64,000 nucleotides of DNA from Vitrella brassicaformis CCMP3155. Its lineage: Eukaryota; Protista; Chromerida. Positions 45,550 to 49,747 of this stretch are shown here, piece by piece; positions within the stretch are counted from its first letter, which is position 1, and each line of letters begins with the position of its first letter. The stretch lies in the NCBI GenBank assembly GCA_001179505.1, contig CDMY01000286.1, positions 1 through 64,000 on the forward strand, read 5' to 3'. The notes beneath the pieces are model-generated. The model saw only the letters and a list, made by a program, of their open reading frames with translations. It was not told where the DNA came from and searched no databases. The translations under genes were made by a program, and so were the position numbers.

Positions 45550-48500
45550 ATGGCGCTGACGATGGCCAGTGCCGCTCTGCCTGCTGGGGGGTCTTCGGAT
45601 GCCTCTGCACAGACACCCAAGATATACGTCATACACGAGGTGCGGGCGAGGGCAGATGAGGGCAGCGCACACACGCAGGCTGTGGCGCCTTGTCTCGGGA
45701 TATCCGTGTCTCCCTCTGTGTGTGTGTGTCAGAATGAGGAGTGGCTGTATCCGTTGCGTGAGAGCTTCCGGGAGCTCAACCAGCCGTTTGTCGACTGGAA
45801 CCTGGCGCACACACTGCCGCAGTCGCTGGGCGGCCACCCCAACAGCAAGCGGCTCATCGCCACACGCGAGGAGAGCGTGCTCAACGGCGGGTCGGCATCC
45901 TCATCTTCGGCATCGTCGTCGAGCGAGAGCATCCTGAATGTGATCGACTTCACCCAGCCGCCCCCTGAGGGCGTCTTCTATAACCGCATGTCGGCCTCAT
46001 CGCACACTCGAGGGGTGAGGTGGCACCACACGCATTGAGATGGATGCATCAATCATTTGTGTGTCCTGTTTGTTTTGCCTGTCAGCATCGATATTCCTGC
46101 GAGTACTGTGGCGTGTTGCTGGAGTGGCTGGAGTCCTACAACCGGACCGTCATCAACGGCAGCCGTGCGCTGGCTCTGGAGATCAACAAGGCCAACCAGA
46201 TCACGCTGTTCCACAGTGTGGGGATCCCCTCGCCCAAGACCATCATCGTGCCCGTCGACAACCTGGCAGTCGGCAAGGCCAGCCAGGCGGACGAGCGCAG
46301 GACCATCAGAGGTGAGAGAGAAAGAGCGAGGCATGGCTGGTGCGGGGTGTGGTGGATGGTCTGCTCATGTGGTGCTTGGTGATGTGTGTGTCAGAGTACT
46401 TCGTTGGTAGCGATTTCCCGTTGTATTCGCCCTTTGTGCTCAAACACAACCGATCGGGCAGCGGCCTAGGTAGGGCACGAGGGAAACGACACATACACAC
46501 ACACACACACAGGCTGCATTGCCTACTGCTGACGTGTTGTGTTGTGTTGTGTTCAGGTGTGCGTTTGTTTGGTTCCGTGTTTGAGTTGGAGGACTACCTC
46601 GCGTCGCCCACGTACGAGCCGCCCATCGACGGCATACTGCTGGTATGCTCTACACACATGCATGAGCAATCCTCGCCCTCATGCTTTGACTTTGTGTCGT
46701 GTGCATCTGTGTGTCTGTCTGCAGGTCCAGGAGTACGTTGCCGTGTCGCACATCACTCGGCTCGAGTTCATCGACAACAAACTCCTCTACTGCCTGAAAA
46801 TCAACGTCGACCTCCAGCAGACTGCCGACACCAGCTCGCCATCAGCACCACCAGTGCCAGCAGCTGCCGCCCCCTCTCCCCTCTCGCAGCCAATCACGGC
46901 CAGCAGCAACACACAGGGCGGCGACTGTGACGACGCCATCGTCATGGCCACCGAGGGGGACGATGCCAGCGGCAAGATCGCCCACAGCAGCACCAAAGAC
47001 ACATGGGGTGGGAGTGCTGGTGGTGCTGAGAACAAGGGCCTGGTGTTCGCCGGTTTCTGCCCCGCCACCCACCTAAGCCACGCGCAGCTGCGGCCGTGCG
47101 ACAACACGCAGGACGCGCAGGTGGACGACCTCAACGCGAGCAGCACGCAGGAGAGCAAGGCCCACGACCAGCACTTCACCATCCTCAACGACACCAGCAA
47201 CGCCGACGAGTTTGCCTACTGGGCCAGCCACCCGTTCATCGGCAAGATCCAGCAGATGCTGCGGGCCAAGAACATCGGCACGTGCGCCATGGAGTTCGTG
47301 CGGGACCCCACCGACCCCTCGCGGCCGCCGCTTCTCATCGATGTCAACGTCAATACCAACTACAACCAGGTGCGCACACACACACACACACACACGCAGT
47401 GGCTGAGCGCATGGAAGCGAGAGAGAGTCTCATTGCTGTGTGTGTGTGTGGATGCAGAGTGCCGAGTCTCGCGCCGATCTAGGGTTTGAGGAGAAGGGCA
47501 TGGGGGCCCTCGCACTCTTCCTCCAACGCAAGCTCAACGAACAGACATCCGCCCCCACTCTCCCCGCTGCACCAGCAGCAGCAGCAGCAGCGCCTCTCCC
47601 ATCCCTCCCCTTCATCCCGCCAGCAGCAGCCCCCGCCCCACCCCCCACCGCGTCTCCCCTCCCTCCCCAGCAGTCTGGCCCCTCCTTGCCCTCTCTGCCC
47701 GCCCCCACCTCTCAGAACCCACCTGCATCTGCCGCAGCGAGCGCTGGTGTGTCGTCGTCTCAGTCGCCGACGTCGTCTGGTCGGCATGTGTATGAGTTCC
47801 GCAACGGACGGCGGCCCGAAATCAACGCTGACGGCACCTTGAAGGCGGAGGCGGCAGAAATCGCCGAGAGCACTCGGGGCGGTAGTGGTGGCGTGACGAC
47901 TGCGCCACAACCACAGCCGGCGACGAGTGGTGGTGGTGCCCCGTTCTCCCCGTCGCCAGCCCAGATGGCAGCGTATCGCAGCTTCGCGGCCGCCAACCCC
48001 CTCACACGCCTCATCCAGTCGTTCGCACACCGGCACACAGTCGAACCCATACCCCGGTCTGCATCGCGTGCTGAGACCCTGAGTGTGGAGCGCGCCGGTG
48101 AGATGCTTGAGATGCGGCCTTCAGAGAAGCTGTCCACCGGGGACGGGGAGGGGGCGACGGAAGAGGCGATATCGACTGCCAATGCGGCGAGTGTGCCGTC
48201 GAGTAGCAGTGGGCCGTCTTCGTCTGCTCCCGTGTTACCGGGGGCTGCTGGCAAGGGGGGCGGTGGTGGTGGTGGTTCGGTGAAGCTGCCAGCTGGTTTG
48301 TCGTTTGTGACTGGGATGATGGGTGCGGTGGTGGCGGGAGCCGTCACCCACCCTGTAGACCTCGTCAAAGTCAGGATGCAACTAGCCGGTGAGGGCGAGA
48401 CACACACAGACAGAGAAGGAAGGGCATAGGGATGTCTTCATGCCTCGTGTTTGGTGAATGCGTGTGTGTTGTCAGGTCAAGTTGGTTCGAGTAGCGTTGC

Positions 48501-49747
48501 TGGTGGTGCGGCGGCCGTCTCGTCGTCCCGGCGGCTGGGCATGCTCGGCACCGCTGTCGACGTCGCCAAGACGGAAGGCATAATGTCGCTGTACAAGTAA
48601 GAGGAAAGACAACAGACACGTGCGTGTTCGCGCGTCATGGATGGCTTGTGCTTTTGCGTGTGTGTGTGTCTTGTGTGCTCCATCAGGGGCATGTCGGGCA
48701 ACGTGCTGCGACAGGTGACGTTCGTCGGCACCAAGTTCGGCAGCTACGACGTCGCCAAGAAGCTGGTGCAGACCTACACCGGCAACGAGAGCGGCCAGCT
48801 GGGCTTCGCCGAGAAGGCCCTGTGCGGTCTGGTGGCCGGCGGTGCCGGTGCAGCAGTGGGCAACCCTGCCGACATGGTCATGGTGAGGATGCAGGCCGAC
48901 GGGCAGCTGCCGCAGCACTTAAGACGCAACTACACCAACGCCGCGTCAGCCATGTACCAGGTCAGTGACCTGCTGACAGCGCAACTGTGCCTGATGACTG
49001 TCCGCGGCAAATGTGTGTGGGTGTTTTTGTGTGCGTAGGTTGCTCGTGAGGAGGGCGTCGTGGCGCTGTGGCGGGGCTGCATGCCGACGGTCAACCGAGC
49101 CATGATCGTCACGGCCGCGCAGATGGCGTGCTACGACCAGACCAAAGAGGAGATACTCAAACACACATCACTCAAGGTCACCAATCTCACCGACCAACGC
49201 GATAAAAGCTCTGCAACCGCATCGTGTGTGGCGTGCTGTTGTGCTGTGTCTCAGGACGGCCCGTTGGTGCATCTGTCGAGCTCTCTTGTCGCTGGCTTCG
49301 TGGCGTCCGTCACATCAAACCCCTTCGACGTGGCCAAGACCAGGCTCATGCAGGTGCGTTTGAATGCATGGACGAAGGGCACATAGCATGAGACGTGGCA
49401 TGCTCATGTGTTTGCCCCTGTGTTGTCTCTCAGATGCAAGCCGATCCCACCACTGGCCAGTACCCCTACAGAGGCACGGTCGACTGCCTCGCTAAGACGG
49501 TAACCACTCACACACCCACACCTGACAGGCGCGTATCATGCTTTCTTTGTGTGCCTTGTGTGTGGATGGGGTGGTTCAGGTGTCTGGCGAGGGTGTGGGT
49601 GCGTTGTACAAGGGTCTTGGCCCGACCATCGCGCGTCAGGTGCCCCTCAACATGCTGCGGTTCATGTGCGTGGAGCAGCTCCGCAAACTCTTCACCAAGC
49701 TGTACCAGCCAAGGCCACCACCACAACAACCGGCTGCTGCCGAATGA
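45550..49747 (+). CDS. Fusion: RimK-like ATP-grasp ligase, ~250-aa low-complexity linker, dicarboxylate/oxoglutarate-type mitochondrial carrier (SLC25)
   Basis: ATP-grasp: KIYVIHENEEW, FYNRMSASSHTRG, VINGSRALALEINK, FVLKHNRSGSGLGVRLF, LLVQEYV, TRLEFI, DVNVNTNYN, GMGALALFLQRKL. Carrier signatures: PVDLVKVRMQ, GNPADMVMVRMQADG and PFDVAKTRLM. Exon 47458-~48391 contains both the ATP-grasp end and carrier helix 1 with no stop. Confidence 0.8.

What the first reader, a model, noticed from the sequence alone, without database searches (positions are those of the whole stretch)
45550..49747. Bacterial-type ATP-grasp ligase fused in frame to a mitochondrial dicarboxylate-type carrier
Seen: the intron 47370-47457 joins NTNYNQ to SAESRADLGFEEKGMGALALFLQRKL, the end of the ATP-grasp domain. 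The same exon then runs about 250 codons (47536-48285) without a stop or intron into carrier helix 1 (LSFVTGMMGAVVAGAVTHPVDLVKVRMQ). All three PX[DE]XX[KR]XR repeats follow. Established: GNPADxxMVRMQADG, NRAMIVTAxQ and RQxP are hallmarks of plant DIC/UCP4-6 and OGC-like SLC25 carriers. The best-known N-terminal extensions on SLC25 carriers are regulatory EF-hand domains, and I know of none with a ligase domain. The HENxEW/NRMSASSHTRG/NTNYN motif set looks like a prokaryotic RimK-like family. Inference: a roughly 1,050-1,100 aa enzyme-transporter that could ligate or sense a carboxylate at the inner membrane and channel it through its own carrier. An internal MAAYRSFAAANPLTRLIQSFAHRH segment (ATG 47965) resembles a targeting peptide, so internal initiation or processing into two chains is also possible. 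Carrier helix 2 is divergent (RQVTFVGTKFG instead of RQxxYxxxRxG), hinting at a changed substrate.
Basis: partly seen in the sequence, partly recalled or inferred. Interest (0 to 1): 0.88.

Follow-up and report, generated by a model that had tools for sequence, protein, structure and literature searches.

The report
Ligase enzyme fused to mitochondrial carrier
The alga Vitrella brassicaformis really does make one spliced message encoding a bacterial-type ATP-grasp ligase joined to a dicarboxylate/sulfate-type mitochondrial carrier; its relative Chromera has the same gene, and clues from related genes point to sulfur metabolism.

Summary
A 13-exon GT-AG model (45550-49747) gives one 1066-aa ORF. 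It is identical to the deposited Vitrella brassicaformis protein CEL99671.1 / A0A0G4EQD3. Single spliced contigs in two runs cover the whole message, linker included.

Chromera velia has an orthologue, Cvel_3911 (908 aa), with the same ligase-linker-carrier order. Its linker sequence has diverged but is also stop-free and in frame. A merge of two genes is therefore very unlikely.

- **N-terminal part:** an ATP-grasp fold that keeps every invariant residue of a large orphan bacterial family, distantly related to RimK.
- **C-terminal part:** a complete SLC25 carrier, closest to Arabidopsis DIC1/DIC2 (UCP5/UCP4; 44-45% identity).
- **Literature:** I found no paper on this architecture.

Function is inferred, not shown. 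Both chromerids have a paralogue of the same ligase fused to the FAD/NADPH half of sulfite reductase. In Vitrella that gene lies head-to-head with the haem subunit gene. The scan had already noted that sister fusion elsewhere in this genome (s1-211996). In Bacillota the ligase gene often sits beside an SsuD/SfnG-like desulfonating monooxygenase, and in three loci behind a SAM riboswitch. DIC-type carriers move sulfate and thiosulfate as well as dicarboxylates.

I read it as an active ligase tethered to the outer face of an anion carrier, possibly in sulfur handling. It is a new variant of a known kind.

The parts
45299..45549 (+). 5' UTR as far as the RNA contigs reach. It holds a 12-codon uORF at 45367 and an in-frame stop upstream of the main ATG.
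   Evidence: X6 record 10 starts at 45299; X7 record 13 at 45331.
45550..49747 (+). Coding region of 13 exons: 45550-45639, 45733-46014, 46086-46311, 46395-46469, 46557-46642, 46725-47369, 47458-48388, 48476-48596, 48687-48960, 49039-49176, 49255-49353, 49434-49499, 49580-49747 (stop). It encodes 1066 aa.
   Evidence: all introns GT..AG, ORF open; 11 joints listed in all four runs, the 47370-47457 intron shown by adjacent record positions; identical to P0001 = CEL99671.1 / A0A0G4EQD3.
45616..47541 (+). ATP-grasp ligase domain (residues about 23-496, exons 1-7). It has two disordered low-complexity inserts (residues 64-93 and 285-391).
   Evidence: distant RimK-family similarity; all 43 invariant family columns kept; AF2 model, ATP-grasp fold; TM by target about 0.73-0.76 to ArgX, LysX and CofF.
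47542..48291 (+). Linker (residues about 497-746) inside exon 7. It is Pro/Ala/Ser-rich, stop-free and predicted disordered apart from the motif listed next.
   Evidence: contigs cover it without a break in X6 and X7.
47935..48048 (+). Conserved linker motif (residues about 628-665; GGAP..S...MAA...AAAxP.LxRL...A.R....P.SA). It is a positively charged amphipathic helix starting near Met638 (ATG 47965). It may be a regulatory or docking helix, an internal import signal, or the presequence of an internally initiated carrier.
   Evidence: aligned with Chromera; hydrophobic moment 1.39 in both, net charge +2 and +3; helical in the model, but low pLDDT.
48292..49747 (+). SLC25 carrier domain of the DIC/UCP4-6 type (residues about 747-1066), with three Mito_carr repeats.
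   Evidence: Pfam PF00153, three repeats, E 9e-65; UCP1/UCP2 E about 1e-49; AtUCP4/DIC2 45%, AtUCP5/DIC1 44%, human DIC 39%, OGC 36% identity.
49748..50143 (+). 3' UTR as far as the longest spliced contig reaches (approximate end).
   Evidence: X6 record 10 maps to 50008 at record position 3713 of 3848, so it ends about 135 nt further on.

Best explanation
One nuclear gene of Vitrella brassicaformis is transcribed and spliced into one mRNA of about 3.85 kb. Its single ORF encodes a 1066-aa chimeric protein with three parts:
- a bacterial-type ATP-grasp ligase that appears catalytically intact;
- a linker of about 250 aa, mostly disordered, with one conserved amphipathic helix;
- a complete dicarboxylate-carrier-type SLC25 transporter.

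The fusion arose before Vitrella and Chromera diverged.

What follows is inferred. The N-termini of SLC25 carriers face the intermembrane space. The ligase should therefore sit on the cytosol-facing side of the inner membrane, tethered to the mouth of an anion exchanger. There it would make or consume a carboxylate-bearing metabolite right where the carrier takes up or releases its substrate.

The best guess for the pathway is sulfur handling: S-oxyanions such as sulfate, sulfite or thiosulfate, or an organosulfur acid, exchanged against a dicarboxylate or phosphate.

My odds:
- one gene, one ORF, one mRNA: about 0.93;
- the full-length protein is a main product: about 0.7;
- the ligase is active: about 0.7;
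- the pathway is sulfur-related: about 0.35.
For: Shown:
- All 12 introns are spliced in four runs. Single contigs (X6 record 10, 3848 nt; X7 record 13, 3816 nt) run from the 5' UTR through both domains and the linker into the 3' UTR.
- The ORF equals the deposited protein.
- Chromera Cvel_3911 has the same architecture on an independent transcript contig with one intron-free ORF.
- The linker has diverged in sequence and length, yet is open and in frame in both species. It stays stop-free in 0.5% and 0.14% of shuffles.
- The ATP-grasp keeps all 43 family-invariant residues. These include the positions that align with RimK's nucleotide-binding Lys, Gly-rich loop and QEY, and its D...ExN motif.
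- The fold model matches ArgX, LysX, RimK, Ddl and RIMKLB.
- The carrier has three repeats and is nearest to AtDIC2 and AtDIC1.

Sulfur link:
- The paralogue in both chromerids is fused to the FAD/NADPH half of CysJ.
- In Vitrella that paralogue lies 358 bp head-to-head with a flavodoxin-NIR_SIR gene.
- Fussy et al. 2019 list Cvel_8163 as cysJ under mitochondrial sulfur assimilation (PMC6668581).
- In 9 of 25 Bacillota loci the ligase gene adjoins an SfnG/SsuD-like monooxygenase. In Lysinibacillus an SsuE-like FMN reductase also follows.
- A SAM riboswitch precedes the unit in three loci.
- DIC1-3 transport sulfate and thiosulfate besides dicarboxylates (PMC3355725).
Against: - Contigs are assemblies, not single molecules. 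No long reads, 5'-end data or protein data were available.
- The linker's codon bias is weak: GC3 is 0.66 against 0.80 in the rest of the gene.
- No biochemical function is known for any member of this ATP-grasp family.
- Outside Bacillota its neighbours are not conserved.
- The Bacillota members are not the chromerids' nearest relatives in the tree, so their context may not transfer.
- The clade of all four chromerid ligases has 95% support in one tree but only 64% in the other.
- Localisation and topology are inferred from the carrier family, not measured.
- Contact point I of the carrier has K where DIC and OGC have R, so the substrate may differ from that of any studied relative.
Confidence: 0.6

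Rival explanations
1. Regulatory or oligomerising head. The ATP-grasp domain does not work as a metabolic enzyme here. It serves as an ATP- or ligand-sensing module, or a dimerising one, that gates the carrier through the conserved amphipathic linker helix. The EF-hand domains of the aspartate/glutamate and ATP-Mg/Pi carriers work this way.
For: The layout matches those carriers: an N-terminal soluble domain, a linker with a conserved amphipathic helix, then the carrier. ATP-grasp enzymes of this branch are usually oligomers (established knowledge for RimK, LysX and Ddl). The same domain is attached to two unrelated partners, the carrier and the sulfite reductase flavoprotein, which suits a portable module.
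Against: Every invariant residue of the bacterial enzyme family is retained in all four chromerid proteins, including the residues at catalytic positions. A pure sensor or scaffold would be expected to drift. The linker helix is modelled with low confidence, and its conservation rests on two sequences.
Confidence: 0.2
2. Two products from one locus. Internal initiation at Met638, or proteolytic cleavage in the linker, releases a soluble ligase and a separate carrier. The carrier's new N-terminus (MAAYRSFAAANPLTRLIQSFAHRH...) would act as a presequence-like import signal.
For: The Met638 segment is positively charged and amphipathic, and Chromera has a similar segment with a Met a few residues away. 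The rest of the linker is disordered and would be open to proteases. Some plant carriers have N-terminal extensions that may aid targeting (PMC3355725).
Against: There is no stop codon for the ligase ORF before the carrier in either species, so a separate ligase must come from cleavage rather than from its own message. The contigs show no transcript start in the linker, although contigs cannot show one. Reading-frame continuity has been kept across a fast-evolving linker in both species, which suggests the joined form matters.
Confidence: 0.15
3. Artefact. Two adjacent same-strand genes were merged by annotation and assembly, and the open linker frame is due to chance in GC-rich DNA.
For: The linker is 65-70% GC. 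Other frames there also hold ORFs of 118-215 aa. Short-read contigs can join overlapping transcripts (caveat stated).
Against: - Nothing would terminate the ligase ORF.
- The same fusion is present and open in Chromera, with a different linker sequence and length.
- Joint chance is below about 1e-6: 0.5% x 1/3 for the frame, times 0.14% x 1/3.
- No protein of 170-543 aa matching exon 7 exists in the database.
Confidence: 0.03

Closest known systems
Arabidopsis mitochondrial dicarboxylate carriers DIC1-3 (UniProt names UCP5, UCP4, UCP6); animal DIC (SLC25A10) and OGC (SLC25A11)
   Same: The carrier domain has three repeats. It carries GNPADMVMVRMQADG, NRAMIVTAAQMACYDQ and ARQVP motifs, with M in place of K/R in the second signature. 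Identity is 44-45% to AtUCP4 and AtUCP5, 39% to human DIC and 36% to OGC. The studied members exchange malate, succinate, oxaloacetate, phosphate, sulfate and thiosulfate (PMC3355725).
   Different: It carries about 745 extra N-terminal residues holding an enzyme domain. Helix 2 reads RQVTFVGTKFG (K for R, F for Y). Its transport has not been measured.
Ca2+-regulated SLC25 carriers with N-terminal EF-hand domains (aspartate/glutamate carriers SLC25A12/13; ATP-Mg/Pi carriers SLC25A23-25)
   Same: These are the established SLC25 members with a large soluble N-terminal domain on the intermembrane-space side. An amphipathic helix takes part in their regulation (PMC4250520 and PMC11539162, listed; the helix mechanism is from my own knowledge).
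   Different: Here the appended domain has an ATP-grasp ligase fold, not EF-hands. Pfam finds no EF-hand. All catalytic-type residues are kept.
RimK-branch ATP-grasp ligases (RimK, LysX/ArgX, CofF, MptN, RIMKLA/RIMKLB)
   Same: Same three-domain fold. The nucleotide-binding motifs align with E. coli RimK. RimK is the best family-level sequence match. RIMKLB ligates citrate to glutamate, a precedent for a di- or tricarboxylate substrate (own knowledge).
   Different: Scores lie far below the curated RimK cut-off (20-56 bits against 143). The family has its own invariant N-terminal motifs (HENxxW, FYNRMSASSHTRG) and a Cys-containing insert. No member has been characterised and none has a solved structure.
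Chromerid ATP-grasp-sulfite reductase flavoprotein fusion (Vitrella A0A0G4GUM0; Chromera Cvel_8163)
   Same: It is the sister copy of the same ATP-grasp domain (support 95, 64). Like the carrier fusion, it is N-terminal, conserved in both chromerids, and attached to a partner that deals with S-oxyanions.
   Different: The partner is a soluble FAD/NADPH reductase rather than a membrane carrier. Its gene is paired head-to-head with the flavodoxin-haem subunit gene.

Membership tests
SLC25 / mitochondrial carrier family | Three tandem repeats of about 100 aa (Pfam Mito_carr) | tested here: met
   PF00153, three stretches, E 9e-65, 214.9 bits against a cut-off of 22.3. One search finds the same exon by exon.
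SLC25 / mitochondrial carrier family | Signature PX[DE]XX[KR] on odd helices and [FY][DE]XX[KR] on even helices | tested here: met
   Read from the sequence. Odd helices: PVDLVK, PADMVM (M at the K/R position) and PFDVAK. Even helices: YDVAK, YDQTK and VEQLR. The two deviations are, from my own knowledge, ones also seen in DIC/OGC-type carriers.
SLC25 / mitochondrial carrier family | Six transmembrane helices in a three-fold bundle | tested here: met
   the AF2 model shows six long helices plus three short matrix helices, with pLDDT 70-86 in the carrier part. TM by hit is 0.71-0.87 to DIC, OGC and UCP models.
SLC25 / mitochondrial carrier family | Location in the mitochondrial inner membrane with the N-terminus in the intermembrane space | not testable with these tools
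   Inferred from the family. Some members reside in other organelles (PMC7565455 abstract).
Dicarboxylate carrier subfamily (DIC / plant UCP4-6) | Closest similarity to characterised DICs rather than to other subfamilies | tested here: met
   AtUCP4 (DIC2) 45% and AtUCP5 (DIC1) 44% rank first. UCP1/UCP2 E about 1e-49 against OGC and AAC at about 1e-21. The PDB holds no DIC structure.
Dicarboxylate carrier subfamily (DIC / plant UCP4-6) | Substrate contact residues on helix 2 (R...Y...R), helix 4 (R) and helix 6 (R) | tested here: inconclusive
   Helices 4 and 6 keep them (NRAM, ARQ). Helix 2 keeps the first R but has F for Y and K for the second R, in both chromerids.
Dicarboxylate carrier subfamily (DIC / plant UCP4-6) | Exchange of dicarboxylates, phosphate, sulfate and thiosulfate | not testable with these tools
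   Needs liposome reconstitution.
ATP-grasp superfamily | Three-domain ATP-grasp fold | tested here: met
   the model has pLDDT above 90 for 228 residues. Foldseek gives E 3.5e-11 to ArgX, with TM by target 0.73-0.76 to ArgX, LysX and CofF.
ATP-grasp superfamily | Nucleotide and Mg2+ binding residues (Lys, Gly-rich loop, QEY, acidic ... acidic-x-Asn) | tested here: met
   K216, G221, G223, G225, Q255, E443, D459 and N461 are invariant; the family profile aligns 'lilKpnRaGkGlGv', 'lLqeyi' and 'agief...yDvN' with RimK's 'LVVKLVEGTQGIGV', 'LVQEYI' and 'AGVDIL...MEVN'.
RimK family alpha-L-glutamate ligases (TIGR00768 / PF08443) | Score above the curated family cut-off | tested here: not met
   20.1 bits (Vitrella) and 55.9 bits (Chromera) against a cut-off of 143.4. 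Pfam RimK gives no hit for Vitrella and 22.8 against 21 for Chromera. It is a separate family within the RimK branch.
Orphan bacterial ATP-grasp family (about 310-320 aa, 'HENxxW / FYNRMSASSHTRG / NTNYN') | Full-length similarity and all invariant columns | tested here: met
   38-46% identity to 84 mostly bacterial members, with 43 invariant columns all present; at least 587 bacterial species genomes encode it.
EF-hand-regulated carriers (AGC / APC) | EF-hand motifs in the N-terminal domain | tested here: not met
   no EF-hand family hit at E <= 0.1. The N-terminal domain is an ATP-grasp.

The most novel reading that the evidence does not exclude
This ATP-grasp family marks an undescribed ATP-dependent step in sulfur handling. 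In Bacillota it is found behind SAM riboswitches and paired with desulfonating monooxygenases. In chromerids it has been welded both to sulfite reductase and to a DIC-type carrier. The carrier fusion would then be the mitochondrial gate for sulfate, sulfite or an organosulfur acid, with ligation physically coupled to transport. That would make it the first enzyme-carrier chimera in the SLC25 family, and it would give a first function to a family found in at least several hundred bacterial species.
Probability: 0.2. Interest if true: 0.85.

Novelty: new variant of a known kind. Interest (0 to 1): 0.66.

Why it matters
- **An unusual carrier.** SLC25 carriers are almost always bare six-helix proteins. 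The only well-studied large appendages are Ca2+-sensing EF-hand domains. A carrier carrying what appears to be a working ligase would be a new way to couple chemistry to transport at the mitochondrial inner membrane.
- **A handle on an orphan family.** The ligase belongs to an orphan family: at least 587 bacterial species genomes in the scan encode it. Its fusion partners in chromerids (a DIC-type carrier and sulfite reductase) and its context in Bacillota (SsuD/SfnG-like monooxygenase, SsuE-like reductase, SAM riboswitch) give a concrete hypothesis to test.
- **A possible transporter for a known pathway.** Chromerids are the photosynthetic relatives of apicomplexan parasites, and Fussy et al. 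2019 place their sulfite reduction in the mitochondrion. This protein could be the route by which S-oxyanions reach that pathway. Chromera can now be transfected (PMC12407925, found), so tagging and localisation are feasible.

Tried and rejected
- **Pfam on single exons of the ligase:** no hits. The domain became visible only with the full protein, the Chromera orthologue and a family profile.
- **Search with exon 7 for a separately annotated carrier of 170-543 aa:** nothing.
- **Representative search with exon 6:** only 4 hits, because the exon is mostly a low-complexity insert. So I cannot say the fusion is absent elsewhere.
- **Metagenome scan with the carrier:** only two unfused relatives, L008 and L009.
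- **Bacterial neighbourhoods:** five single look-ups gave no obvious conserved partner. One of them, L012, later proved to have a SAM riboswitch in front of the gene. Clustering the neighbours of about 84 bacterial loci gave one recurrent partner, limited to Bacillota.
- **Donor lineage of the ligase:** not resolved. The chromerid branches are long, and the four-member clade has 95% support in one tree but only 64% in the other.
- **Poly-glutamylation of the protein's own C-terminus, RimK-style:** considered and dropped. Vitrella ends in E, but Chromera ends in G.
- **Plastid targeting:** rejected. Only 22 residues precede the ligase domain, and they have no signal-peptide-plus-transit layout.
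- **P0007 (ATP-grasp + thiolase):** looks like a frameshifted bacterial gene call, so I did not count it as a fusion.
- **Literature:** searches for the architecture and for Cvel_3911 found nothing. A search for ATP-grasp together with sulfur starvation listed no paper holding both.

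
Full report
**What is in the window**

Reading 45300-50100 and joining the open frames at GT..AG sites gives 13 exons and one ORF of 3201 nt, or 1066 aa. The exons are 45550-45639, 45733-46014, 46086-46311, 46395-46469, 46557-46642, 46725-47369, 47458-48388, 48476-48596, 48687-48960, 49039-49176, 49255-49353, 49434-49499 and 49580-49747.

Exon 7 then runs 931 nt without a stop. It holds the last helix of the ligase domain, about 250 linker codons and the first carrier helix.

The 5' leader has an in-frame stop and one 12-codon uORF, so ATG 45550 is the first usable start.

**Is it one transcript?**

Nine public runs hold the stretch. Several hold about two thirds of its words, which fits spliced RNA.

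I laid four of these runs on 44900-50600:
- Eleven of the twelve introns are listed as GT..AG joints in all four runs.
- The twelfth (47370-47457) lies in a skipped CA-repeat. It is shown instead by adjacent record positions: 1651 goes to 1653 in X6 record 10.
- X6 record 10 (3848 nt) and X7 record 13 (3816 nt) are single contigs. They run from 45299 or 45331 through every exon and the whole linker to about 50143.
- The unlisted 698 nt of record 10, between 48387 and 49579, equal exons 8-12 exactly.
- In the two shallower runs the contigs break only at low-complexity repeats (47366-47407 and 47560-47600).

Contigs are not single molecules, so this alone does not prove one mRNA.

**Independent support**

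A search of 1.84 billion representative proteins with exon 6 returned a 1066-aa protein, P0001. It equals my model letter for letter. It is CEL99671.1 / UniProt A0A0G4EQD3 of Vitrella brassicaformis CCMP3155, automatically named 'ATP-grasp domain-containing protein'.

The second hit, P0002, is Chromera velia Cvel_3911 / A0A0G4FY07 (908 aa). Its features:
- It has the same order of parts: RimK-type ATP-grasp hits plus three Mito_carr repeats.
- It is 64% identical to Vitrella in the carrier and 39% in the ligase.
- It is encoded as one intron-free ORF on a 3852-nt transcript contig (L001).

The two linkers differ in length (about 250 and 173 residues) and share only a short motif. Even so, both are stop-free and in frame.
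- Shuffles leave the frame open in 105 of 20,000 trials for Vitrella and 28 of 20,000 for Chromera.
- All the other frames hold 2-7 stops.
- No protein of 170-543 aa matches exon 7.
- If there were two genes, the ligase ORF would have no stop codon.

I put 'one gene, one ORF, one mRNA' at about 0.93.

**The ligase domain**

- **Sequence.** Piecewise Pfam scans saw nothing. The whole domain hits TIGR00768 rimK_fam far below its cut-off (20 bits for Vitrella, 56 for Chromera, cut-off 143). A profile of 90 family members finds RimK structures at 5e-8.
- **Family.** It is large and bacterial. A search with the free 349-aa homologue P0003 found 3442 proteins of about 310-320 aa; those listed with a name are bacterial. 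At least 587 species genomes encode it, across Bacillota, Pseudomonadota, Acidobacteriota, Gemmatimonadota and Verrucomicrobiota. No member has a solved structure.
- **Conserved residues.** Vitrella is 38-46% identical to these proteins and keeps all 43 invariant columns.
- **Catalytic positions.** K216, the G221/G223/G225 loop, Q255, E443 and D459-x-N461 align with RimK's nucleotide and metal-binding motifs.
- **Fold.** An AF2 model (pLDDT above 90 for 228 residues; two disordered inserts at 64-93 and 285-391) is a full ATP-grasp fold. It is nearest to ArgX/LysX, PsnB, Ddl and RimK in the PDB, and to RIMKLB, CofF and Ddl in Swiss-Prot.

I conclude that it is a distinct family in the RimK branch and is very likely still an enzyme.

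**The carrier domain**

- Pfam finds three repeats (E 9e-65).
- The signatures read PVDLVK, PADMVM and PFDVAK on the odd helices, and YDVAK, YDQTK and VEQLR on the even helices.
- The nearest Swiss-Prot carriers are Arabidopsis UCP4 (DIC2, 45%), UCP5 (DIC1, 44%), a Dictyostelium OGC-like carrier (41%), human DIC (39%) and OGC (36%).
- Among solved structures, UCP1 and UCP2 score about 1e-49, against about 1e-21 for OGC and AAC.
- Helix 2 reads RQVTFVGTKFG in Vitrella and RQASFVGTKFG in Chromera.
- An unfused environmental relative (L008, 41% identity) shares the GNPADMVMVRMQADG motif.
- DIC1-3 carry malate, oxaloacetate, succinate, phosphate, sulfate and thiosulfate (PMC3355725).

**The linker**

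Most of it is Pro/Ala/Ser-rich and modelled as disordered. One segment, residues about 628-665, aligns with Chromera (GGAP..S...AAAxP.LxRL...A.R....P.SA).
- It begins near Met638 (ATG 47965).
- It is positively charged and amphipathic: the hydrophobic moment is 1.39 in both species.
- It is predicted helical, though at low confidence.

It could be a docking or regulatory helix like the one in the ATP-Mg/Pi carriers, an internal import signal, or the presequence of an internally initiated carrier. I could not tell these apart.

**Evolution**

Both chromerids also have a second copy of this ligase, fused to FAD_binding_1 and NAD_binding_1. These are Vitrella A0A0G4GUM0 and Chromera Cvel_8163.

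In the trees, the two carrier-fused copies pair (support 98 and 99) and the two reductase-fused copies pair (90 and 96). The four together have 95% support in one tree and 64% in the other. Both fusions therefore predate the Vitrella-Chromera split. No bacterial donor lineage is resolved.

Free homologues exist in other eukaryotes. One is P0003, which lies on a 1292-nt transcript-like contig. The structure search also found a cluster of 390-aa proteins whose members with known taxa are eukaryotic, mostly diatoms.

**A clue to function**

The reductase-fused paralogue is the FAD/NADPH half of the sulfite reductase flavoprotein.
- In Vitrella its gene lies 358 bp head-to-head with a 966-aa flavodoxin + NIR_SIR gene (L011).
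- Fussy et al. 2019 list Cvel_8163 and Vbra_10401 as cysJ, and Vbra_10400 as cysI, under 'mitochondrial sulfur assimilation' (PMC6668581).
- Earlier notes of this scan had flagged the same paralogue (s1-211996) and the head-to-head pair (s1-212144).

The first of those notes claimed that bacterial relatives respond to sulfur shortage. I tested that claim.
- A SAM (S-box) riboswitch lies directly upstream of the ligase gene in Salinicoccus cyprini (L012 4762-4864; gene at 5001; E 2e-18).
- The same riboswitch lies upstream of a two-gene unit in L063 and L077 (E 6e-20 and 1e-19).
- In those two loci the first gene is a luciferase-like monooxygenase, closest to SfnG and SsuD (E about 1e-85 and 1e-60, below the curated cut-offs).
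- That monooxygenase adjoins the ligase gene in 9 of 25 Bacillota loci, spread over several genera.
- In Lysinibacillus an SsuE-like FMN reductase follows the ligase gene.
- Outside Bacillota no neighbour recurs.

So three contexts touch sulfur: SAM-regulated desulfonation operons, sulfite reductase, and a carrier type known to move sulfate and thiosulfate. This is circumstantial evidence. It is also the only functional signal the family gives.

**Most likely mechanism**

Steps marked (inferred) are not shown by any result here.
1. The full-length protein inserts into the inner membrane through its carrier domain (inferred).
2. The N-termini of SLC25 carriers face the intermembrane space (established for the family). 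The ligase therefore hangs on the cytosol-facing side, on a flexible tether (inferred).
3. There it uses ATP to ligate a carboxylate-bearing compound beside the mouth of an anion exchanger. The substrate is delivered to the carrier, or trapped as it leaves (inferred).
4. The compound may be sulfur-related (about 0.35).

The rival readings are a regulatory or oligomerising head (0.2), two products through Met638 or cleavage (0.15), and an artefact (0.03).

**Novelty**

The protein is already in public databases under an automatic name. Six literature searches found no description of an ATP-grasp-carrier fusion or of Cvel_3911.

Large soluble N-terminal domains on SLC25 carriers are known, but as EF-hand sensors. 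An enzyme domain in that position is a new variant of that kind.

The fusion was found only in the two chromerids. My searches for further cases were limited, however.

Noticed in passing
L011:5318-13919 (Vitrella CDMY01000821.1): The paralogous ATP-grasp + FAD/NADPH gene (816 aa) lies head-to-head, 358 bp apart, with a 966-aa flavodoxin + NIR_SIR gene. The FMN domain of the sulfite reductase flavoprotein has moved onto the haem subunit, and an ATP-grasp sits in its old place.
   Followed up: partly
L012:4762-5963; L063:1698-3930; L077:1692-3978; L026:1940-4530: In Bacillota the orphan ATP-grasp gene lies behind a SAM riboswitch in three loci. It often follows an SfnG/SsuD-like luciferase-type monooxygenase (9 of 25 loci), and in Lysinibacillus an SsuE-like FMN reductase comes after it. 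This looks like an undescribed sulfur-salvage operon.
   Followed up: partly
window:42897-44830 (minus strand): The upstream gene, transcribed divergently, is a 2OG-Fe(II) oxygenase (DIOX_N at 44255-44830; 2OG-FeII_Oxy at 42897-43364). A run of N, an assembly gap at about 43.8-44.1 kb, interrupts it.
   Followed up: partly
window:51129-52507 (minus strand): The downstream convergent gene is an alpha/beta hydrolase (Hydrolase_4). One RNA contig (X1 record 4) runs from exon 13 of the carrier gene past 50600. The two 3' ends may overlap, or the assembler may have joined them.
   Followed up: no
window:46534-46723, 49592, 49860, 49948: In all four runs some contigs match these short stretches, for example exon 5 with its flanking intron parts, and then continue into sequence not found in the window. 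The breakpoints fall at TG- and TGTTG-rich repeats, so they are probably assembly chimeras or unspliced fragments.
   Followed up: partly
P0006 (ENA contig, 612 aa); P0007 (689 aa): P0006 joins the same ATP-grasp family to a patatin-like phospholipase domain. P0007, listed as 'ATP-grasp + thiolase', reads like an out-of-frame translation of GC-rich DNA and is probably a miscalled gene.
   Followed up: no
window:37716-39049 and 54927-55676 (minus strand): ORFs with TLDc-domain hits (37716-39049) and a DUF6851 hit (54927-55676), probably exons of other genes in the window.
   Followed up: no
ESM Atlas clusters: Other Mito_carr clusters with extra domains exist: Ribosomal_L12 in chordates and Anp1 mannosyltransferase in Ascomycota. 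These may be read-through gene models rather than true fusions.
   Followed up: no
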